From positions 186,001 through 250,000 of IMG/VR virus record IMGVR_UViG_3300042391_000634: a DNA stretch of 64,000 nt; one strand, given 5' to 3'. Below the pieces are notes generated by a model that saw only the letters and a program-made list of their open reading frames with translations, made no database searches and was not told the DNA's origin. Shown in pieces: positions 7,179 to 43,186 of the stretch. Made by a program: the position numbers and the translations under genes. Within the stretch, counting starts at the first letter, position 1; each line of letters opens with the position of its first letter.

Positions 7179-10100
7179 TGGCAAAATATAAAGTTCCAAG
7201 TCAAGCTGCAAGTGGTGCTGATACATTCAGTGACAATCTAGTAGGTAATCAAATTACCACAGGTACTGGTCAATTGACTAATACGAACTTTGCGTTAGAT
7301 AGTGAGGTTATACAACGAGATACAAAGAAATTTAAAACAAACCCATTTTCGGATTTTTTAACTTTAGACGATTTAAAGAAAGAAACCTCAGCTTTATCTA
7401 CAGATGAGATTGCAAAAAGAAAAAAAGAAATAAAATTTAAAGGTTCAAAAGGTGATGCGGGTAAATCTTTATTTGGTTCATTAAAAAGTAGATTAGGTGT
7501 TTCAACACAAAACATAATTATTAATTTTCCTGCTGGAATTTTAATTGATTCAAATAGTTTTATTAGTGTTAGTGGATTAACTGCAACAGGTATTGAGTAT
7601 AATAAATTAAATGATACAACTCAATTTGATGTTGAGTTTAGTATGTTATACAATCCATTTTCTTTAATACTATTAAAACCAAAAAGTAAGGATTTAACAA
7701 CATCTACAAATTCAACAAGAGATTTTTATAGTTCATATACAAAATATGTTATTACGGTTAGTGGTAAAACTTATAATATAACAAATTACACCGAACCGAA
7801 TAGTAATAATATTATAAAATTAAAAGTAAGTGGTAAACCATTTACCGATACAACATATTCAGAAGATATTTTAATTAGACCAAATGACGGAGTAGTTGAT
7901 GAATTTTTTAATGGATTAGATGATTTAGAAGAAACATTATTAAATAGGGATAGTTCTCCAATCTACACCGCTAGTTTCAAAGTTCCAAGAGATAGTTTTG
8001 ACCAAACAAAAACAGAATTAATTTCCGTTAATTATAGTTGGCCAATATCTGATAAAGATAATTGGAATATTAAAATTGCGGGTTTAGAATATGAGGATTA
8101 TTTAAGAAAATTAAGTGATATTGCTGATGAGATAGATGATTACAAATCAAATTTATTTGTAAGATTTTTAACATCCCCACAATTATTTGAGTTTGATTCT
8201 CCAGATAAAAAGGCGGAAGCAATTTTTCAATTGTATGGTCAATCGTTTGATAAAGTAAAAAAATACATTGATAATATTGCTAACATGAGAAATGTTAGTT
8301 ACGACGGAATTAATAATGTTCCCGATGTTTTATTAAAAAACTTAGCAAATACATTAGGATTAGATACTGTTAATTTAATAGATGAAAAAGGTTTAGATGA
8401 ATTATTATATACAAAGACATCACAACAATATTCAGGATTAGTTTCAGGAACATCATTATTAGATGCTGAGTTTGAATTTTATAGAAGGTTATTGGTGAAT
8501 TTAGCTTACATTTATAAATCAAAAGGAACAAGACAATCATTAGAATTCTTTTTAAGATTTTTAGGTGCTCCTGAACCATTGATTAAAATTAATCAATATG
8601 TTTATAAAATTACATCATATCCAAAATCATTTAATTTAGAGGATGATATCTATAATGCGGTTACAGGAAGAAATGTTATAAAAACTGCGGTATTTTTACC
8701 AACGGGTGGAACAATAGATGGTGTGGTTTATACAGGATATTCATACTATATAAAATCAACAACAGGTTCAACATCATTAAGTATTGATGGATATCCCGTA
8801 GATTCAGTTACGTTACAACCAAAATCAGTAACAGGTTCAACAGATTTGTTTTTTCAAAAAGGTTCTGGATGGTATGATAATACGGCAAGTCACAAATCAC
8901 CTTTGATACTTGACCAAGATTTATCAAGTGGAACAACTGTAGATGGTAATTATGTTTTAACGGGAAGAACAAAAACTGTTATTACTAAAAATAGTAGATA
9001 CACATACGGAGAAGATTATTTTGACATATATAGAACATTACCTGGATTAGATACGGGATTTGAATTACAAACATTAATCGATAATAGTCAAACCGAATTA
9101 CTTGGGGACGATTCACGTTTAATTTTAAATCGTAAAAACATTGAAGTTTATTTATCATCCGCACAAGCGGTTGATTTTGACATATACCGTAAATCAAGAG
9201 ATTTAGAATTAACATTCGGAACAAATAGTTTAACACCACAAACGGGAGTAACTTTTGCAGAATATGTTGATTTAATGTTACATCAACAAATTAAAAATTC
9301 TCATATTATAAGATATAAAAAGAATTACATTACATTAGAGGACATATACCAAGATTACATAACAAATAAACACGGATTAAATTTTAATTATACACCATAC
9401 ACTTTCCCTGACATTAATTTGTTTATTGAGAAAATGAGTCCATATTGGACAAGTGTAATAGACCAAATTATACCTTCAACAACATTATGGACTGGAGGTA
9501 ATTTAATTTCAAATAATATTTTTGGAAGACCAAAATATCAATATAAATATGGATGTCAACCAATTGAAATAGTTGATAATTTATATCCTGAAATACCAAG
9601 TGGATATACTCAATATTTTGAAGACGTTATTGATGAATATGATAATGATATATTCACCGAAATCAACTCAATTGGAGAATATAAATACGACGGACGAATT
9701 TATATATTTCCAACTTTTGAAATAAACGGCGTAACCTATTCTGGAACAACAGGAAACACATCATCAGTTACAAGTATTACCGGATTAACATATGTTTTAT
9801 TATCGGGTATAACAAATACAACAAATAGTGCTAAGTTATATGAACCTGATGGTAGTGGAAATGCTTATGCGATGATTAGTGGTACCACAAATACTATTAG
9901 TCCTGATTATGATAAAGTAGAAGATTTGTGGCAAACGGCAATTTTAAATACTATTGAATATATAAATAATTGCACCGATTGTTTATATTCAGGAAATACA
10001 ATTGATAATGTGGGTTATATAAGTTCATATGCACCATTTACGGGTGCAACAGGAATTACAATAACGCCAATAAAAATTAGAAAAAAATTATTAACGGGTA

Positions 10101-26529: not shown

Positions 26530-27207
26530 ATGACACCTAAAGATTACCAACAATTTGGACTTTACGCTAAAGATAAAGGGATTAGCTCCTTAAATTTACA
26601 CTACCACAACCAAAAAATTGAGGACAGTTTAACTCCATATATTTTGGAGGAAAGACAAATGAATGTTACAATAATGGATGTGTTCTCAAGATTGATGATG
26701 GAACGTATCATTTGGGTAGCGGGGGGTGTGGATGACCATATGTCAACTATTTGTCAAGCACAGTTAATGTTCTTGGATAGTTTAGATGGTAATGATATTA
26801 CTATGCACATTGACAGTCCAGGAGGTTCGGTTAAATCCGGTTTATCAATTGTTGATGTAATGGATTATATCAAATCAGACATTAGAACAATCAACACAGG
26901 TATGGCGGCTTCAATGGGTTCAGTTCTATTAGGTGCTGGTACTAAGGGTAAAAGAGGGTCATTGAGATTCTCTCAAACCATGTTACACCAATCATCAGGA
27001 GGTGCTGGAGGTAATATTCAAGATGCGAGAATTACTTTCCAAGAATGGGAAAAAGTAAACAATATATTATTTGACCTTTTAGGTAAGTATTGTGGAAAAA
27101 CCGCTGAACAGGTTAAAAATGATGCTTCAAGAGATTTATGGTTAAATGCTGAAGAAGCACTTTCCTATGGAATTATCGATGAAATAGTTAAAAAGAAGAA
27201 AAAATAA
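26530..27207 (+). CDS. clpP: ATP-dependent Clp protease proteolytic subunit
   Basis: DVFSRLMMERII, IDSPGGSV, GMAASMG (Ser), MLHQ (His) and RDLW (Asp). Confidence 0.93.
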   Translation: MTPKDYQQFGLYAKDKGISSLNLHYHNQKIEDSLTPYILEERQMNVTIMDVFSRLMMERIIWVAGGVDDHMSTICQAQLMFLDSLDGNDITMHIDSPGGSVKSGLSIVDVMDYIKSDIRTINTGMAASMGSVLLGAGTKGKRGSLRFSQTMLHQSSGGAGGNIQDARITFQEWEKVNNILFDLLGKYCGKTAEQVKNDASRDLWLNAEEALSYGIIDEIVKKKKK

Positions 27208-28426: not shown

Positions 28427-29236
28427 ATGAAAAAATCCATAATTAGTAACACGGAAGAGATACAACAATATATAAGAGACATTCGTAAAATACCTGTTAT
28501 ATCACACAAAAGACAGGAAGAAATTTTCATTAGATTAAACGATAAGACAATAACTAAACAAGAACAAAAAGTTTTGTTTGATGAATTGGTTGTAGGTAAT
28601 TTAAGATTTGTAATATCAGTTGCAAAGATGTTTCAGAATCAAGGAATGGATATTATGGATTTAATATCAGAAGGAAACATCGGGTTAATTAAGGCAGCAC
28701 AAAGATTCGACCCAACAACCGGTGTAAAGTTTATCTCATACGCAGTGTGGTGGGTTAGACAATCAATAATGGCGTCACTTAATGAAAACGCAAGAACAAT
28801 AAGACTACCATCAAACTTAATCCAAGAGGTTCAAAAATCTAAAAAGGAAGAAGTTAATGAAGAGGATAATTTTTTTGTAAATAATTCAGATGAACCTGTT
28901 ACAAGTGGGTTACCTTATTGTGTTGGTTTATACAGAGAAATTAATGAAGACGGTGACCAATTAATTGATATTATACCGAACAAAGAGGCTGATAGACCTG
29001 ACGCAATTGTTAATTCACCTGAAGAAATAAAGAAAAAAGTTTCTGCGATGTTGAGTGTTTTAGATGATAGGGAAAAGACAATTATTGAGAGATATTATGG
29101 TCTAACAGGTATTGAATCAAACTTAGAAGACTTAGGGGAGGAATATGGTTGTACAAAAGAACGTATTAGACAATTACGTGATAAGGCCATTAAGAAGCTT
29201 AGAAATGAGAGTTTTGGTCTATTAAACTATTTATAA
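28427..29236 (+). CDS. RNA polymerase sigma-70 factor, Bacteroidota RpoD-like
   Basis: NLRFVISVAK, DLISEGNIGLIKAAQRFD, KFISYAVWWVRQSI, RTIRLP and region 4 TKERIRQL; no region 1.1. Confidence 0.92.
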   Translation: MKKSIISNTEEIQQYIRDIRKIPVISHKRQEEIFIRLNDKTITKQEQKVLFDELVVGNLRFVISVAKMFQNQGMDIMDLISEGNIGLIKAAQRFDPTTGVKFISYAVWWVRQSIMASLNENARTIRLPSNLIQEVQKSKKEEVNEEDNFFVNNSDEPVTSGLPYCVGLYREINEDGDQLIDIIPNKEADRPDAIVNSPEEIKKKVSAMLSVLDDREKTIIERYYGLTGIESNLEDLGEEYGCTKERIRQLRDKAIKKLRNESFGLLNYL

Positions 29237-29248
29237 AAATATAACATT

Positions 29249-29542
29249 ATGAAAAAGTTAATCGAATTAATAAAAACATATAAACTACAGATACTGATTT
29301 TTTTAACAGTTGTATTCTTTTTTCGCTCTTGTAGTAGTTCAAGTAAAGTGACTAAATTAGAAAAAATTGAAAAACAAAACGTATCTATGATTGATAGTCT
29401 TAAAACTAAACATAAAAACGAAAAAATAGCAATTCATAGTTTTTATGATAATTGGATTACACAAAAAGATAGAGGACCACAATTAATGGAACTACATTTT
29501 ATTGTTAAAGAAAACTTAAAAAAAGAACAAGAATCTAAATGA
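29249..29542 (+). CDS. Small membrane-anchored coiled-coil protein (lysis cassette?)
   Basis: N-terminal TM ending FRSC; TATTTATA at 29228-29235. Confidence 0.45.
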   Translation: MKKLIELIKTYKLQILIFLTVVFFFRSCSSSSKVTKLEKIEKQNVSMIDSLKTKHKNEKIAIHSFYDNWITQKDRGPQLMELHFIVKENLKKEQESK

Positions 29543-30687
29543 AACATTGGTTAAACCAAAATTTTAAAGCATTAATCATTGCAGCATTTTTGATTCCAAT
29601 CATTACTGTTGCTATTGTTTCTATTTCACACGTAACAAAATGGTATGGTATATCCAATCCCGTAAGTTGGGCCGTTTATCTATCAATTGGAATTGAGATT
29701 GCAGCATTATCGGCATTGGCTGCCATTTCAGCAAACATGGGTAAGAAAGTTTATTTCCCATTTGCCGTCGTAACGTTAATACAGTTTATAGGTAATATAT
29801 TTTTCGCGTACACATATATCGATATCAACGGACAGTCTTTTAGGGATTGGGTTGATTTAGTGGCACCATTAACAGAATTAATGGGTGTAGACCCAACTGA
29901 CTTAGTGGGTAATAAAAGATTCTTAGCATTTTTTGCCGGTGGTATGTTACCAATCATTTCATTATCCTTTCTTCATATGTTAGTTAAATTTACAGAAGAA
30001 GATAGACTAAAAGAAAATCAAGCACCACCAATTAAAGAATTAGAATCTAATCCCGAAGATTTAAAACATTTTGTTGATGAAGCAACAAGATTACATTTAA
30101 GTGAAGATGATTTAAAGAAACTTGAAGAAGTTTTGTTAAACCCACCTCCACCAAATGAAGAATTAAAGAAAGCAGCGGATGAATATAAAAGAAGAGGAGA
30201 ATTATTGGCGGAGATAATTAAGAACGACGAAGAATTAGGTTTATATGATGAACCGTTTGATAATTCAATGATTAAAGAAGATTTGGATGATGAAGTATCT
30301 GATTGGGATGAAACATTAATGGATGGTTTAGAAGATGAAGAACCTTTCTTCACTGAAGAAGAGATAGAGAATATTTTACAAGAAGAACCAACAGAGGAAG
30401 AGATTCAACGAAATTTTTCTACTATAGAACCTGAAACGGAGAATATTTTACAAAATAACGAATCACTTGAATTTGATATTTTAGTTCAAGAGGATTTAGA
30501 AGTTCCTGAACAAGAATTTGATGGATTTGTTCCTGAACCATTTGCAACACCTGAGGAAGTTATAGAATTGAAAATAGATGAGGATAATGAACGAATGGAT
30601 ATTATAGGTCAGAATGGAAATGAAGGTCTCCATTATGAAAACGAAGAGAATACATCATCCGAACAAGATGATGAAAAAAAAAATTAG
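29539..30687 (+). CDS. Multi-pass membrane protein with very acidic C-terminal tail (holin-like position)
   Basis: About four TM segments in the first 150 aa, then an E/D-rich tail; lies upstream of an amidase-like gene. Confidence 0.55.
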   Translation: MKHWLNQNFKALIIAAFLIPIITVAIVSISHVTKWYGISNPVSWAVYLSIGIEIAALSALAAISANMGKKVYFPFAVVTLIQFIGNIFFAYTYIDINGQSFRDWVDLVAPLTELMGVDPTDLVGNKRFLAFFAGGMLPIISLSFLHMLVKFTEEDRLKENQAPPIKELESNPEDLKHFVDEATRLHLSEDDLKKLEEVLLNPPPPNEELKKAADEYKRRGELLAEIIKNDEELGLYDEPFDNSMIKEDLDDEVSDWDETLMDGLEDEEPFFTEEEIENILQEEPTEEEIQRNFSTIEPETENILQNNESLEFDILVQEDLEVPEQEFDGFVPEPFATPEEVIELKIDEDNERMDIIGQNGNEGLHYENEENTSSEQDDEKKN

Positions 30688-30983
30688 AAGAGTCCCTAAT
30701 TCCGATATCGGAGGAATTGAAGGAGGAATTGGTTACGTCAATAATAGAAGATTTATCCCCAAAAGAAATAACCCCAATCTTAGAATCGATAGACTCTAAA
30801 GAAGAAAATTTATATTGGGAAACAGACGACGTTAATCCAAATTCTATAATTTACGATTTGGAAAATAATAAAACAATTATACCAACATTTGAAGAAGAAA
30901 TACTACCTCCGTCTCCAGTACCATCACCATCGGAAAAAATAATATCAAGAAATGTTAGTTCAAGACGTAGAAATATTAGATAA
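30675..30983 (+). CDS. Probable -1 frame continuation of 29539 (KKKLEESLIPISEELKEELV...)
   Basis: The frame opens exactly at the A10 run (TGA at 30672), has no ATG start and continues the acidic composition. Confidence 0.5.
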   Translation, partial: KKKLEESLIPISEELKEELVTSIIEDLSPKEITPILESIDSKEENLYWETDDVNPNSIIYDLENNKTIIPTFEEEILPPSPVPSPSEKIISRNVSSRRRNIR

Positions 30984-31560
30984 CGTCAATTTAAATTTAG
31001 TTCGTAAGAAGTCTAAAAAAACACAAATATTTTTATACGATACTCAACGAAGATTAGACGATTTTATTAATAAAATCAAATATCGTAAGAATGGTTATTA
31101 TGATGATATTCCACATTACGTGGTATCTAAATTAGGAATGGTTTATCAATTATTTGATACTAACCATAGTTCAAATACATTTAATAACCCTAATATAGAT
31201 AAAAAACAGATTAAAATTGCAATTGAGAACTTAGGATGGTTAAATAAGAATACCATCACTGGTGTCCTTAATAATTGGATTGGCGACCCATACAGAGGAG
31301 AACCACATATCCGTAATTGGAGGAATCATTACTTTTGGGATACATACTCAGATACCCAAATAAAGTCTCTTTATGAGTTGTGTAATGAATTATGTGATAA
31401 ACATAAAATAACCAAACAAATAGTCCCATCTCATGGATACTTTGAAAATGCCTCAAATTTCATGGGAATAGTATGTAAATCCAATTTTTCAAGTATTTAT
31501 ACAGATATAAACCCTTCCTTTAACTTTGGGGTTTTTTTTAACGATGCAAAAGAAAATTAA
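30952..31560 (+). CDS. N-acetylmuramoyl-L-alanine amidase-like (Amidase_2/PGRP fold)
   Basis: PHYVVSKLGMVYQL, IKIAIENLG, YSDTQIKSLYELC and DINP; some Zn ligands appear substituted. Confidence 0.65.
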   Translation: MLVQDVEILDNVNLNLVRKKSKKTQIFLYDTQRRLDDFINKIKYRKNGYYDDIPHYVVSKLGMVYQLFDTNHSSNTFNNPNIDKKQIKIAIENLGWLNKNTITGVLNNWIGDPYRGEPHIRNWRNHYFWDTYSDTQIKSLYELCNELCDKHKITKQIVPSHGYFENASNFMGIVCKSNFSSIYTDINPSFNFGVFFNDAKEN

Positions 31561-40504: not shown

Positions 40505-43186
40505 ATGGCACTACAAAGAATAAATTGGACTCAGATTGAGACAGAAAATGTTAGTACAGGTACCACGATAGATCTGGGTTCATCAACTACTCCGTTAAAT
40601 GCAGTATATACAGATGACTTATATGTTTCAGGAACAAGTATATCTACGTTAATATCTGCTGGCGGTAATGGCTCCTCTGGAACCTCAGGTTCTAACGGTG
40701 CTTCGGGTACATCGGGTTCTAGCGGCACATCGGGTTCATCTGGTGCGAGAGGTTCTTCAGGAACATCAGGTTCTTCAGGAACATCAGGACAAAATGGTAC
40801 ATCAGGTTCTTCAGGAACATCAGGACAAAATGGAGCAAATGGAACAAATGGTTCCTCAGGAACATCGGGACAAGCGGGAACGTCAGGTTCATCAGGTTCT
40901 TCGGGTCAAGACGGTTTAAATGGTTCCAATGGAACTTCAGGTTCTTCTGGAACATCAAGTAATGGAACATCAGGAACATCAGGGTCTAATGGGTCAAGTG
41001 GAACATCTGGAGCAAGAGGTTCGTCAGGAACGTCGGGTTCTTCAGGTACATCAAGTAATGGAACATCAGGAACAAGTGGTTCATCTGGTTCTTCAGGTAT
41101 AAATGGTTCTTCAGGAACTTCAGGTTCTAGTGGATTGAGTGGTACGTCAGGTACAAGTGGAACATCAGGTTCTAATGGTAGTTCAGGTTCATCAGGAACA
41201 CAAGGAACATCAGGTTCTAGTGGTTCTTCAGGAACGGCAGGAACTAGTGGTAGTAATGGTTCATCAGGAACTTCAGGTAATAACGGTTCTTCAGGATCTA
41301 GTGGTTCATCAGGTTCCAACGGATCTAGTGGTTCATCAGGAACAAGTGGTTCTTCAGGAACGTCAGGTACAAGTGGTGCTAGAGGTTCTTCAGGAACGTC
41401 AGGTACAAGTGGTGCAGTTTATGCTACACGTTCAAGTACACTAATTTCAGATATTGATGAACATGATGGATTACCGTTAACATTTACGGTTGATACTGGT
41501 TTATCATATACAGTTGGACAAAAAGTAATTGCAGCCTACGATGTTAATAATTATTTAATTGGTAGAGTAAGTGGTTATAGTGGTAATCAATTATCGATTT
41601 TAATTGATACACATGGTGGTGGTAGTGAACACGACGATTGGTACATTAATTTATATGGTGGAACAACTATAGTTTCAGGTGGAACAGGTGGAGGTACAGC
41701 ATTAATAGTAACCGACGGAACAACTTCTGTTACCGATGTGAATAGAATAAGATTTAGTGGTGCAACAGTTACACAAACGGCTGCGGGACAATTAACGGTA
41801 ACAATAACGGGTGGTGAAGGAACGGGAACCGCAGGTTCTTCGGGAACGTCAGGATCTAGCGGGTCGTCAGGAACTGCAGGTTCTTCAGGATCAAGTGGAA
41901 CATCATCTTCAATTTATGTTAAACAGCAAGGTGGTTCACCTATTACGAATATATCAGGTGTCACATTTAGTGGTGCAACTGTTGTAGATGACGGAAACGG
42001 AAATGTAACCGTTCAAGTTACAGGCGGAGGTGAAATTGGCAACGATGGTTACCAAGGACACTTAGCAACATGGAAGTTCAATACGAGTACTAATACAAAT
42101 GTAAATCCAAATACAGGTTATTTTACTTTAAACACATCTGCGTGGGGATTAACAACAACAAGTATTTCGTTAGCAAATTTTAGTTTTTCACCAAATGTAG
42201 ATTTTTCAAGTTACTTAGATAGTTTATCTAACGGTTCAATATTAAAATTAATTAAAGCGACAGACCCGTCAATTTTTAAAATATTACAAATCACATCAAC
42301 TCAACCGTATGATGTTGGATTTGAGAATTTCACAGTAACACAAATTGCCACTGGTGGAGATGATCCATCAAGTGATGATGAGTTTTTACTAATCACTATG
42401 GGAGAAGCTGGTGTATCGGGAAATGATGGTTCATCAGGTACATCAGGTACATCAGGTTCATCAGGTACTAGTGGAACTTCAGGTATAAACGGTACATCTG
42501 GTACAGACGGTAGTTCAGGAACAAGTGGTTCAGATGGTACATCGGGTACATCAGGTTCTTCAGGTAGCGATGGTACAAGTGGTACTTCAGGATCTAGTGG
42601 TTCTGATGGTACAAGTGGAACATCTGGTTCTAGTGGTAGTAATGGTTCGTCAGGTACATCAGGTAGTGACGGTACTTCGGGTATTAATGGTACTTCAGGT
42701 ACAGATGGTACTTCAGGTACAGATGGTACTTCAGGAACTAGTGGTACAGATGGTACATCTGGTACATCACCTTTATACGTTGACGCAACTATAAAAGGAT
42801 ATCAGATAGTTCTTAACATGAGTGGAGGATCCACCGACGCCACTACACCGATTGCAAGTGTTTTAGGTCCAAATGGTGAAAATAAAGCTACATTAGAATC
42901 TCAAGGTTGGTCATTCACAATACCAACAACAAATAGATTACAAATTGGTAGACCAAGTGGTTTACAATCACAACCTATAGTGAATATAATGACACATGGC
43001 GTTAATGGTACGGAGGTTTTATCTAAATCACCAAATGCAACCACCACCGCTGGACAGAGTGTTTTCCAACAATATTCGGGTGGTAATTGGACCGGTATGG
43101 TTTTATATTCCGTATCGTCAGCAAACACAGGTGCGGCAACGGGAGGAAGTACGAACGTAATAATAACATTTGGTATAACAACTTAA
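40505..43186 (+). CDS. Gly-X-Y (GSS/GTS) repeat fibre protein 1
   Basis: Long Gly-every-third tracts separated by globular modules; TATTTAT at 40478. Confidence 0.7.
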   Translation: MALQRINWTQIETENVSTGTTIDLGSSTTPLNAVYTDDLYVSGTSISTLISAGGNGSSGTSGSNGASGTSGSSGTSGSSGARGSSGTSGSSGTSGQNGTSGSSGTSGQNGANGTNGSSGTSGQAGTSGSSGSSGQDGLNGSNGTSGSSGTSSNGTSGTSGSNGSSGTSGARGSSGTSGSSGTSSNGTSGTSGSSGSSGINGSSGTSGSSGLSGTSGTSGTSGSNGSSGSSGTQGTSGSSGSSGTAGTSGSNGSSGTSGNNGSSGSSGSSGSNGSSGSSGTSGSSGTSGTSGARGSSGTSGTSGAVYATRSSTLISDIDEHDGLPLTFTVDTGLSYTVGQKVIAAYDVNNYLIGRVSGYSGNQLSILIDTHGGGSEHDDWYINLYGGTTIVSGGTGGGTALIVTDGTTSVTDVNRIRFSGATVTQTAAGQLTVTITGGEGTGTAGSSGTSGSSGSSGTAGSSGSSGTSSSIYVKQQGGSPITNISGVTFSGATVVDDGNGNVTVQVTGGGEIGNDGYQGHLATWKFNTSTNTNVNPNTGYFTLNTSAWGLTTTSISLANFSFSPNVDFSSYLDSLSNGSILKLIKATDPSIFKILQITSTQPYDVGFENFTVTQIATGGDDPSSDDEFLLITMGEAGVSGNDGSSGTSGTSGSSGTSGTSGINGTSGTDGSSGTSGSDGTSGTSGSSGSDGTSGTSGSSGSDGTSGTSGSSGSNGSSGTSGSDGTSGINGTSGTDGTSGTDGTSGTSGTDGTSGTSPLYVDATIKGYQIVLNMSGGSTDATTPIASVLGPNGENKATLESQGWSFTIPTTNRLQIGRPSGLQSQPIVNIMTHGVNGTEVLSKSPNATTTAGQSVFQQYSGGNWTGMVLYSVSSANTGAATGGSTNVIITFGITT

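What the first reader, a model, noticed from the sequence alone, without database searches (positions are those of the whole stretch)
30661..30983. Candidate programmed -1 frameshift in a lysis-cassette membrane protein
Seen: gene 29539 ends GAA AAA AAA AAT TAG over an A10 run (30674-30683). The -1 frame is closed by TGA at 30672, opens exactly at the run, and continues ~100 codons with the same acidic character (KKKLEESLIPISEELKEELV...) without an ATG. A downstream hairpin is possible (TAATTCC 30697-30703 with GGAATTG 30713-30719, or the TCCGATATCGGA palindrome). Known: A_AAA_AAA is a slippery heptamer and long A runs also cause transcriptional slippage; phage frameshifts are mostly described for tail chaperones and capsids. 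Inference: short and long isoforms of a holin-like protein.
Basis: partly seen in the sequence, partly recalled or inferred. Interest (0 to 1): 0.62.

Follow-up and report, generated by a model that had tools for sequence, protein, structure and literature searches.

The report
Conserved poly-A slippage site, two isoforms
A run of ten A's near the end of a jumbo-phage membrane-protein gene is a conserved recoding site: most likely RNA polymerase slips on it, so the phage makes a short 382-residue and a long 481-residue form, much as some bacteria do with dnaX.

Summary
Gene 29539..30687 ends GAA AAA AAA AAT TAG over an A10 run (30674-30683). The -1 frame opens at the run and stays open for 102 codons with no ATG.

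It is not an assembly error or a pseudogene. Of the 120 best homologues from independent metagenome assemblies, 118 stop within 5 residues of the run. In 45 of 46 distinct related phage loci an A9-A11 run lies at the same domain boundary, while 244 kb of flanking DNA holds one such A run.

The extension behaves as coding sequence. It is under purifying selection, usually has no start codon, and ends in a motif (RNVxNSRRRxFR) shared with relatives whose gene is continuous. Those continuous relatives keep the run in frame, and the frame relation flipped at least four times on the tree.

The phage avoids such runs elsewhere: none of 57 KKK tripeptides is coded AAA-AAA-AAA.

One relative needs a shift other than -1. 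I therefore favour transcriptional slippage on the A run over classical -1 ribosomal frameshifting, but no reads or RNA data could be obtained.

"Holin-like" is unsupported. The only family signal is a TacA/DUF1778 antitoxin-like motif.

The parts
29539..30687 (+). Zero-frame ORF, the short isoform (382 aa): N-terminal membrane domain plus a long acidic tail, ending EKKN-TAG
   Evidence: The exact protein is on 5 contigs, and 118 of the 120 best homologues end within 5 residues after the KK coded by the run.
29539..30018 (+). N-terminal membrane domain (aa 1-160), four long hydrophobic helices plus one shorter helix; highly conserved, no known family
   Evidence: Alignment A2, mean column identity 78%. 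AlphaFold model pLDDT 78 with helices 9-35, 41-64, 68-93, 99-114, 122-161. No PDB or Atlas match with a named function. No Pfam or PHROGs family.
30064..30189 (+). TacA1/DUF1778 antitoxin-like motif (aa 176-217: ...LHLSEDDLKKLEEVLLNPPPPNEELKKA...)
   Evidence: Pfam PF08681, 28.2 bits (cut-off 21), profile positions 38-79 of 80. Matches the C-terminal part of solved DUF1778 antitoxins, best 7zg5_C, E = 2e-4.
30672..30674 (+). TGA that closes the -1 frame immediately before the run
   Evidence: the -1 frame opens exactly at the run in the window and its close relatives.
30674..30683 (+). A10 slippery run, the recoding site; contains an in-phase A_AAA_AAA heptamer
   Evidence: An A9-A11 run at the homologous position in 45 of 46 distinct related loci, against 1 A>=9 run in 244 kb of their flanks. 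0 of 57 KKK tripeptides in this genome are all-AAA, 28.7 expected.
30685..30687 (+). Zero-frame stop TAG, one codon after the run
30675..30983 (+). -1-frame extension (102 codons plus TAA), the C-terminal module of the predicted 481-aa long isoform. Junction ...SSEQDDEKKKLEESLIPIS...; ends ISRNVSSRRRNIR.
   Evidence: Homologous extension in the -1 frame in related loci. C-terminal motif shared with continuous homologues. dN/dS 0.11-0.69 in this frame against about 0.4-4 in control frames. No ATG. Natural A11 variant P0002 reads straight through. Model mostly disordered with a beta-hairpin at residues 59-68.
30952..31560 (+). Downstream Amidase_2 (endolysin-like) gene; its ATG lies 32 nt before the end of the extension
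   Evidence: Pfam PF01510, 35.6 bits; PHROGs endolysin. The order sigma, this gene, amidase is kept in all 66 loci. The 32-nt overlap recurs in gene calls of relatives.
30697..30719 (+).
   Evidence: z = 0.06. A stem position is broken without compensation in L002-L008. Across 31 distinct junctions the 60 nt downstream have mean z -0.35, several with dG about 0.
29249..29542 (+). Upstream 97-aa small protein with one N-terminal hydrophobic segment; its stop overlaps the ATG of the gene (ATGA)
   Evidence: Detected by tblastn in 17 of the 66 loci, all among the 47 closer relatives. No family.
28427..29236 (+). Phage sigma-70-family factor (context: transcription probably by host RNA polymerase)
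   Evidence: Pfam Sigma70_r2 and r4. A second, weaker sigma-like match lies elsewhere in the genome (21.3 bits, under the 24-bit cut-off), and no RNA polymerase subunit was detected.

Best explanation
The A10 run at 30674-30683 is a selected recoding site at the boundary between the acidic tail and a about 100-residue C-terminal module of a phage-specific membrane protein.

Standard decoding gives the 382-aa short isoform, which stops one codon after the run. In a fraction of transcripts the RNA polymerase stutters on the T10 template and adds one non-templated A. This is probably the host enzyme, redirected by the phage sigma factor. Those mRNAs read GAA AAA AAA AAA TTA GAA... and give the 481-aa long isoform, ending in the conserved RNVxxSRRRxxR tail.

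The device works like Thermus thermophilus dnaX, Shigella mxiE/spa13 and Citrobacter rodentium tssM1. As with dnaX, different lineages have swapped which isoform is the default while keeping the run.

Shown: the run, the frames, their conservation, coding selection on the extension, and avoidance of such runs elsewhere. Inferred: that the slip happens mainly at transcription, its efficiency, and what the two isoforms do. A contribution from ribosomal slippage or sliding on the same run is not excluded.
For: (1) Not an error. 118 of the 120 best homologues from JGI, ENA, NCBI and Logan assemblies end within 5 residues after the run.

(2) The run is conserved. A9-A11 (mostly A10) lies at the homologous boundary in 45 of 46 distinct loci down to about 45% protein identity, with different flanking bases. 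Their 244 kb of flanks hold 1 A>=9 and 2 T>=9 runs.

(3) The extension is real coding sequence. It sits in the -1 frame in every out-of-frame locus where tblastn finds it, except L062. The fused products and the naturally continuous homologues share LYWExDDxNP...RNVxNSRRRxFR. dN/dS is 0.11-0.69.

(4) It has no initiation of its own. 22 of 31 distinct extensions have no ATG, and 5 have no ATG, GTG or TTG.

(5) Continuous homologues keep the run in frame: L013, L029, L040, L041, L071 and L075 with A10; L068, L072 and L076 with A11. A +/-1 A change there gives a stop within a few codons in at least one frame. L071 became in-frame through an extra T, not by changing the run. The in-frame state arose at least 4 times on the tree.

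(6) The genome selects against such runs. 0 of 57 KKK tripeptides are AAA-AAA-AAA (28.7 expected), and this is the only A>=9 run inside an ORF of 120 aa or more. This matches the threshold of about 9 nt found by Baranov et al. 2005 (PMC1088944).

(7) Points favouring transcription over classical -1 ribosomal frameshifting. No significant or conserved downstream structure and no Rfam element. Run length is held at 9-11 rather than 7. L062 (A10) and L063/L064 (A11) are near-identical, both out of frame, and need different shifts, which fits a spread of transcript lengths as measured for tssM1 (PMC4256274).

(8) No phage RNA polymerase was detected, and one clear sigma-70-family gene is present with a second match below the Pfam cut-off.
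Against: There is no direct RNA or protein evidence.

An in-phase A_AAA_AAA heptamer is present in every lineage, and ribosomes can slide on poly-A without stimulators (PMC4363877, abstract as listed). A translational contribution therefore cannot be excluded.

A10/A11 differences between near-identical genomes show that the run also changes in DNA, so heritable switching may contribute.

The host and the slippage propensity of its polymerase are unknown. Bacterial RNA polymerase was reported to slip less on A runs than on T runs in E. coli (PMC6260861). L062 could be a defective variant or an assembly error.
Confidence: 0.6

Rival explanations
1. Classical -1 programmed ribosomal frameshifting. 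Ribosomes shift back one base on the in-phase A_AAA_AAA heptamer, or slide on the poly-A, and translate the extension from an unaltered A10 mRNA.
For: An in-phase X_XXY_YYZ heptamer is present in the window, and any run of 10 A contains one. The extension is in the -1 frame in 44 of 45 out-of-frame loci. Poly-A is known to cause ribosome sliding in E. coli without added stimulators (PMC4363877, listed). E. coli dnaX uses A_AAA_AAG (PMC5009743).
Against: No significant or conserved downstream structure: window z = 0.06; 31 junctions have mean z -0.35, some with dG 0. No SD-like element is seen upstream in the window (by eye). The run is kept at 9-11 A although 7 would do. L062 needs a +1/-2 shift. 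Strong genome-wide avoidance of A9 is what selection against polymerase slippage predicts (PMC1088944).
Confidence: 0.2
2. A DNA-level contingency locus (phase variation). The run is kept because replication slippage switches genomes heritably between short-only (A10) and long (A11) states, and the long form is made only by the A11 subpopulation.
For: A10 and A11 occur in near-identical genomes: L068/L069 against L002, L076 against L009, and L062 against L063/L064. The in-frame state arose several times on the tree.
Against: Within the window's own clade (91% identity or more) 71 of 72 distinct sequences are the short form and one is long. Whole clades stay out of frame over dS > 1 while the extension keeps dN/dS about 0.11 (L021 against L030), which requires regular expression from out-of-frame genomes. 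Several in-frame lineages kept A10 and changed frame by another indel (L071, L013, L075). L062 and L063 differ in run length, yet neither is in frame.
Confidence: 0.12
3. An artefact or decay: a homopolymer miscount in the assembly (true A11), or a recently broken gene whose 3' part is a dying remnant.
For: Homopolymers are error-prone in some sequencing chemistries. One natural A11 variant exists (P0002). Reads could not be inspected.
Against: The same frame break is seen in more than 100 distinct sequences from many independent assemblies and four data sources, and across lineages with only about 50% identity and different junction contexts. The extension is under purifying selection.
Confidence: 0.02
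4. The extension is a separate small gene, started independently at TTG 30717 (88 aa), and not part of the membrane protein.
For: An 88-aa TTG-started ORF can be drawn at 30717..30983.
Against: 22 of 31 distinct extensions have no ATG, and 5 have no ATG, GTG or TTG at all. Amino-acid conservation starts at the run itself (KKKLEE...). At least fifteen related loci, and 32 proteins in the large collection, encode it fused in one ORF.
Confidence: 0.02

Closest known systems
Thermus thermophilus dnaX (tau/gamma by transcriptional slippage on A9) and the dnaX family in general
   Same: A homopolymeric A run lies near the 3' part of the gene at a domain boundary. The two products share the N-terminal part and differ by a C-terminal module. 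Stops lie close by in the alternative frames. Different lineages make either the long or the short product by the non-standard route (PMC1088944; PMC5009743; here).
   Different: This is a phage membrane protein of unknown function, not a polymerase subunit. In the window the long form is the recoded one. The run is A10-A11. The mechanism is not shown experimentally here.
Citrobacter rodentium tssM1 (A11 before a premature stop) and Shigella mxiE / spa13
   Same: A membrane or secretion protein whose zero-frame stop directly follows a long A (or U) run. Insertion of non-templated bases restores the frame and gives two length variants. No SD-like or structural stimulator is nearby. In spa13 the end of the extension overlaps the start of the next gene and affects its expression (PMC4256274; PMC5009743). 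Here the extension overlaps the amidase ATG by 32 nt.
   Different: Those are bacterial chromosomal or plasmid genes with RNA-level proof (ESI-MS of cDNA). Here the evidence is comparative only, the element is a jumbo phage, and conservation spans a much larger and deeper family.
Phage -1 programmed ribosomal frameshifts (lambda G/GT tail chaperone; T7 gene 10A/10B from my own knowledge)
   Same: A phage gene gives a minor C-terminally extended product from an overlapping -1 frame at a slippery sequence near the 3' end (G/GT: PMC5009743).
   Different: Those use short heptamers, often with stimulators, and act in tail chaperones or capsids. Here the signal is a 10-nt homopolymer with no conserved structure, in a membrane protein next to an amidase.
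Homopolymer contingency loci (phase variation by slipped-strand mispairing)
   Same: A homopolymer in a coding region, with run-length differences between near-identical genomes.
   Different: Run length is strongly biased to one state within clades, and the out-of-frame part stays under purifying selection. Several frame changes did not involve the run.

Membership tests
Programmed transcriptional slippage site (Thermus dnaX / mxiE / tssM1 type) | Homopolymeric A or T run of about 9 nt or more inside a coding sequence | tested here: met
   A10 at 30674-30683, inside and one codon before the end of the 382-aa ORF.
Programmed transcriptional slippage site (Thermus dnaX / mxiE / tssM1 type) | The run is conserved among homologues although synonymous alternatives exist and such runs are otherwise avoided | tested here: met
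   45 of 46 distinct loci carry A9-A11 at the site against 1 A run in 244 kb of flanks. 0 of 57 KKK tripeptides are all-AAA in this genome.
Programmed transcriptional slippage site (Thermus dnaX / mxiE / tssM1 type) | The alternative frame encodes a conserved polypeptide that has no start of its own and is fused in some relatives | tested here: met
Programmed transcriptional slippage site (Thermus dnaX / mxiE / tssM1 type) | A heterogeneous mRNA population with non-templated A's, absent from the DNA | not testable with these tools
Programmed transcriptional slippage site (Thermus dnaX / mxiE / tssM1 type) | Two protein products detected in infected cells | not testable with these tools
   Needs western blot or mass spectrometry.
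-1 programmed ribosomal frameshift site | X_XXY_YYZ slippery heptamer in phase with the zero frame | tested here: met
   GA[A AAA AAA] AAT: A_AAA_AAA at 30675-30681.
-1 programmed ribosomal frameshift site | A stimulatory downstream stem-loop or pseudoknot 5-9 nt after the heptamer, conserved among homologues | tested here: not met
Window z = 0.06. 31 junctions have mean z -0.35, some with dG 0. No Rfam element.
-1 programmed ribosomal frameshift site | The required shift is always -1 | tested here: inconclusive
   It is -1 in 44 out-of-frame loci, but L062 (A10) has the extension in the +1 frame while its near-twins L063/L064 (A11) have it in -1. L062 may be a defective variant.
Holin | Membership in a described holin family | tested here: not met
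   No holin family in Pfam or PHROGs even at E = 10 for the membrane domain. No structural match.
Holin | A small membrane protein with TM helices encoded next to the endolysin | tested here: inconclusive
   Four long hydrophobic helices and conserved adjacency to Amidase_2. However, the protein is 382-481 aa with a about 220-320-residue acidic tail that is cytoplasmic by my topology estimate, which is atypical.
DUF1778 / TacA-type antitoxin | The C-terminal toxin-binding segment | tested here: met
   PF08681, 28.2 bits (cut-off 21), profile positions 38-79 of 80. Matches the C-terminal part of solved DUF1778 antitoxins, 7zg5_C E = 2e-4, and also 6ajm_C and 5zgn_A. That this segment binds the toxin is from my own knowledge of these structures.
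DUF1778 / TacA-type antitoxin | The N-terminal ribbon-helix-helix DNA-binding part and an adjacent GNAT toxin gene | tested here: not met
   Profile positions 1-37 are not matched. No Acetyltransf_1 match anywhere in the phage genome.
Phase-variable contingency locus | Run-length polymorphism between near-identical genomes | tested here: met
   A10 against A11: L002 and L068/L069, L009 and L076, L062 and L063/L064.
Phase-variable contingency locus | Both states common within populations, with expression of the distal part only in the ON genotype | tested here: inconclusive
   71 short against 1 long among sequences 91% identical or more, and purifying selection in lineages that stay out of frame, both argue against. 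Within-sample reads were not available.

The most novel reading that the evidence does not exclude
The A run is an evolvable isoform-ratio dial in a large family of uncultivated freshwater jumbo phages. It doses a C-terminal docking module (beta-hairpin plus basic tail) onto a membrane-tethered protein that carries the toxin-binding segment of a TacA/DUF1778 antitoxin. That protein may be a membrane-anchored decoy antitoxin against host GNAT-toxin abortive-infection systems. At the same time, translation of the long form runs 32 nt past the amidase start codon, which could couple endolysin synthesis to the slippage rate. Lineages would retune the dial by flipping the default frame while keeping the run.
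Probability: 0.15. Interest if true: 0.8.

Novelty: new member of a known kind. Interest (0 to 1): 0.62.

Why it matters
Gene callers split or truncate this gene. In the public collections it appears as a 382-aa protein followed by about 300 unassigned bases, so a conserved C-terminal module of a widespread jumbo-phage protein family is missing from the protein databases.

Productive use of a long homopolymer for two isoforms is well documented in bacteria and RNA viruses. I found no report for jumbo phages or for phage membrane or lysis-region genes in the searchable literature.

The family offers dozens of natural variants: A9, A10 and A11 runs, in frame and out of frame, and two different N-terminal domains. 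That makes it a ready-made comparative system for testing how run length and frame arrangement set isoform ratios, and how often evolution swaps the default product, as in dnaX.

The strong avoidance of A9 elsewhere in the genome also suggests that the unknown host's transcription or translation machinery slips appreciably on such runs.

Tried and rejected

Close DNA relatives among deposited phages: none. A protein search of the phage collection found only LR756500, an uncultured 462-kb phage. Its 306-aa homologue is 32% identical over the membrane domain and has no A run.

Function of the membrane domain. Pfam at E = 10, PHROGs, ESM Atlas features, Foldseek against PDB and the Atlas shape search gave nothing with a function. 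The C-terminal extension has no family and folds mostly disordered.

Complex prediction of the extension with the downstream amidase gave 'no answer' (score 0.27, mark 0.32). This counts neither for nor against binding.

Rfam on 30300-31200 gave only a chance-level sRNA hit on the other strand.

Alternative genetic code. I considered it and rejected it without naming one. The stops after the run are both TAG and TAA across relatives, and the zero frame hits TAA three codons after the TAG.

Other long A or T runs in the genome as further recoding sites were checked for open frames around each run. The A9 at 40584 lies in a 5' leader. By my reading of the sequence and frames, the other A10 at 179840 starts inside a stop codon and the A9 at 7895 codes a terminal KKK. 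I saw no second frame junction among the other runs.

The +1-frame product (41 codons in the window) varies from 5 to 42 codons among relatives. I take it as a by-product.
Full report
**Setting.** The window is bases 186001-250000 of a 335,630-bp IMG/VR virus record, rated complete by CheckV, with GC 31%. No deposited phage shares DNA similarity with the region.

**The observation.** The ORF 29539..30687 codes for 382 residues. These are an N-terminal membrane domain followed by a long, very acidic tail.
- It ends GAT GAA AAA AAA AAT TAG.
- The A10 run is 30674-30683.
- The -1 frame has TGA at 30672-30674, then runs open from 30675 for 102 codons (KKKLEESLIPISEELKEELV...ISRNVSSRRRNIR) to TAA at 30981-30983.
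- It has no ATG. The first possible start is TTG at codon 14.

One extra A in the run joins the two frames into a 481-residue protein.

**Is it an error or a broken gene? No.**
- A word-based search of the large protein collection found the identical 382-aa protein on five contigs. Of the 120 best distinct homologues, from JGI, ENA, NCBI and Logan assemblies, 118 end within five residues of the KK coded by the run, and 87 end exactly in DDEKKN.
- A scan of IMG/VR gave 66 related loci. In 41 of them the gene stops 0-12 nt after an A9-A11 run, which is A10 in 36. In every one of these loci where tblastn finds the extension, it lies in the -1 frame.
- The bases flanking the run differ between lineages: gatgA10ttag, cctA10tcatag, gttA10gttcag, gctgA10tctatag. 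The run itself is kept.
- In 46 distinct loci, 45 have an A9-A11 run at this boundary. The 244,151 nt of DNA flanking the gene in those loci hold a single A>=9 run and two T>=9 runs.

**Is the extension coding? Yes.**
- The computationally joined products of all out-of-frame lineages end in the same motif, K..(I/V)xRNVxN(S/T)(R/Q)RRxFR, preceded by LYWExDDxNP..(I/V)YDLxN.
- The same motifs end relatives whose gene is one continuous ORF: L013/L014 (514 aa), L029, L040 and L041, plus 32 proteins of 474-641 aa in the large collection.
- Pairwise dN/dS in the extension frame is 0.11-0.69, for example 0.11 for L021 against L030 at dS 1.3. The same alignments read in the two other frames give about 0.4-4.
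- 22 of 31 distinct extensions contain no ATG, and five contain no ATG, GTG or TTG. Independent initiation is therefore not a general option.
- In the 32 nt where the extension overlaps the start of the next gene, the extension's frame is the better conserved one: N93, V94 and R99 are invariant or nearly so, while the first invariant amidase residue is Q25.

**The run is kept even where it is not needed to join the frames.** This is the most telling result.
- The continuous homologues still carry A10 or A11 in frame at the same boundary, reading DDLKKKDELE, DEDKKKIHLE, EELKKKEIED or EEKKNFEIL.
- L071 is in frame with A10 because of an extra T after the run (gatgA10tttaac, against gatgA10ttag in the window).
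- L075 is in frame with A10. L072-L074, L068/L069 and L076 are in frame with A11.
- In these lineages one A more or less gives a stop within a few codons in at least one frame. The short form would then be the slippage product.
- On a tree of the membrane domain the in-frame state needs five changes, at least four of them forced by well-supported branches, inside an out-of-frame background.
- A more distant group (L048-L061) has an in-frame A10 about 22 codons before a different C-terminus. L040 and L041 carry a second in-frame A10 further upstream.

This is the pattern described for dnaX. There the same two products are made by standard and non-standard decoding in different bacteria, and a small change can reverse which one is the default (PMC5009743; PMC1088944).

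**The genome avoids such runs elsewhere.**
- In 289 ORFs of 120 aa or more (96,019 codons), AAA makes up 80% of lysine codons.
- None of 57 KKK tripeptides is coded AAA-AAA-AAA, although 28.7 are expected if codons were chosen independently.
- The only A>=9 run inside such an ORF is this one.
- I checked the open frames around each of the other fifteen A or T runs of 9 or more and saw no second frame junction. The A9 at 40584 lies in a 5' leader. By my reading, the A10 at 179840 starts inside a stop codon and the A9 at 7895 codes a terminal KKK.
- Baranov et al. found that selection against slippage-prone runs becomes evident at about nine nucleotides in many bacteria, and that exceptions are often used for expression (PMC1088944).

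**Which mechanism?** Three routes can join the frames.

(a) Transcriptional slippage.
- It needs only a long homopolymer.
- It yields a spread of lengths; 10-15 A were measured from the A11 template of tssM1 (PMC4256274).
- It explains why the run is held at 9-11 rather than 7.

(b) Classical -1 ribosomal frameshifting.
- An in-phase A_AAA_AAA heptamer is present.
- However, the 60 nt downstream fold no better than shuffled sequence in the window (z = 0.06).
- Across 31 distinct junctions the mean z is -0.35, and several have dG about 0.
- No Rfam element is present.
- Stimulator-free ribosome sliding on poly-A remains possible (PMC4363877, abstract listed).

(c) Heritable run-length change in DNA.
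- It does occur. A11 variants sit inside A10 clades (L068/L069, L076), and L062 (A10) differs from L063/L064 (A11).
- It cannot be the main route. The window's clade is 71 to 1 in favour of the short form.
- The extension stays under purifying selection in clades that remain out of frame over long divergence.

L062 and L063/L064 are informative. They are near-identical and both out of frame, with the extension in the +1 frame in one and the -1 frame in the other. A spread of transcript lengths serves both; a strict -1 ribosomal shift does not. L062 could, however, be a defective variant.

No phage RNA polymerase was detected. One clear sigma-factor gene is present, with a second sigma-like match below the Pfam cut-off, so the host enzyme probably transcribes the gene.

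I rate the recoding site as real at about 0.85. Transcriptional slippage as its main mechanism stands at about 0.6.

**What the protein is.**
- The membrane domain (aa 1-160) is highly conserved (78% mean column identity). It models as four long hydrophobic helices plus a shorter one (pLDDT 78).
- By the positive-inside rule the tail should be cytoplasmic. This is my inference.
- It matches no Pfam or PHROGs family and no solved or Atlas fold with a function.
- The only family signal is PF08681 (TacA1/DUF1778) at aa 176-217, above Pfam's cut-off. It covers only the C-terminal half of the profile and matches the C-terminal part of solved DUF1778 antitoxins.
- The ribbon-helix-helix part is absent, and the phage has no Acetyltransf_1 gene.
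- The extension models as disordered, with one confident beta-hairpin at residues 59-68 and a basic tail. It looks like a docking module.
- The gene order sigma factor, this gene, Amidase_2, 180-aa protein is kept in the 47 closer loci. All 66 loci keep sigma, this gene and amidase.
- The extension ends 32 nt after the amidase ATG, in the window and in the relatives' gene calls. This resembles the spa13/spa32 arrangement, where slippage affects the downstream gene (PMC5009743). Whether it couples amidase translation here is untested.
- A complex prediction of the extension with the amidase gave no verdict.
- 'Holin-like' is therefore an open guess based on neighbourhood only.

**Domain shuffling.** A sister group (P0121-P0150; L062-L066, L071-L075) has a different N-terminal membrane domain of about 260 aa in place of the 97-aa protein plus the four-helix domain. 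It keeps the TacA-like motif, the acidic tail, the A run and the C-terminal module. The recoding site thus belongs to the tail module, not to one particular membrane anchor.

**Limits.**
- The host is unknown.
- IMG/VR loci are not fully independent samples, so I counted distinct sequences where it mattered.
- The in-silico joined proteins were used only inside scripts. Folds and searches used natural sequences: the window's two frames, loci, and the natural A11 allele P0002.

**Verdict.** The two-isoform recoding interpretation is strongly supported by comparative evidence. The most likely mechanism is transcriptional slippage rather than structure-stimulated -1 ribosomal frameshifting. The holin label is unsupported. 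This is a new and unusually well-replicated member of a known kind of recoding, in a phage family where it has not been described.

Noticed in passing
window 30064-30189 (aa 176-217 of the gene): A TacA1/DUF1778 antitoxin-like segment (LSEDDLKKLEEVLLNPPPPNEELKKA) scores above Pfam's cut-off and matches the C-terminal part of solved DUF1778 antitoxins (7zg5_C, 6ajm_C, 5zgn_A). The ribbon-helix-helix part is absent and the phage has no Acetyltransf_1 gene. It could be a membrane-tethered decoy antitoxin against host GNAT toxins.
   Followed up: partly
whole genome G000 (window included): Long A runs are strongly avoided in coding sequence. 0 of 57 KKK tripeptides in ORFs of 120 aa or more are AAA-AAA-AAA (28.7 expected). 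Only two A10 runs and no T10 occur in 335 kb.
   Followed up: yes
G000:C1:179840-179849 (6.2 kb upstream of the window start): The only other A10 in the genome. By my reading it begins inside the TAA stop of a 338-codon ORF (ata ttt TAA AAA AAA AAT TAA TAG), so it cannot change that ORF's frame. Its role is unknown; a 3' end or terminator-like signal is possible.
   Followed up: partly
L062:3674-3683 versus L063/L064:3674-3684: Near-identical relatives differ by A10 against A11, and neither is in frame. The extension is +1 in L062 and -1 in L063/L064. This is either natural run-length polymorphism served by multi-length slippage, or L062 is a defective or misassembled variant.
   Followed up: partly
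L071-L075 and L062-L066; proteins P0121-P0150: A sister group replaces the 97-aa upstream protein plus the four-helix membrane domain by one unrelated membrane domain of about 260 aa (MNNNWLKYLV...). It keeps the TacA-like motif, acidic tail, A run and C-terminal module.
   Followed up: partly
L040 (gene nt 793) and L041 (gene nt 766); L029 (nt 1152): Some relatives carry a second in-frame A9/A10 run in the acidic tail, with stops close by in both other frames. This would give a third, still shorter product.
   Followed up: no
window 30952-30983: The amidase ATG lies 32 nt before the end of the extension, and the same overlap recurs in relatives' gene calls. Within the overlap the extension's frame is better conserved than the amidase's. 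Translational coupling of the amidase to the long isoform is possible.
   Followed up: partly
window 29539-29542: The 97-aa upstream ORF (29249..29542; one N-terminal hydrophobic segment followed by RSCSSSS, lipoprotein-like by eye) overlaps the gene's start as ATGA. It has no family.
   Followed up: no
window 26530-27207: This 225-aa ORF looks like a ClpP-type serine protease by eye (GGSV...MAASMGS). I did not test it against any family.
   Followed up: no
L070 (LR756500.1:139319-144726): The only relative among deposited phage records is an unannotated 462-kb uncultured phage. Its 306-aa homologue is 32% identical in the membrane domain, has a lysine- and glutamate-rich tail, and has no A run of 8 or more.
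   Followed up: yes
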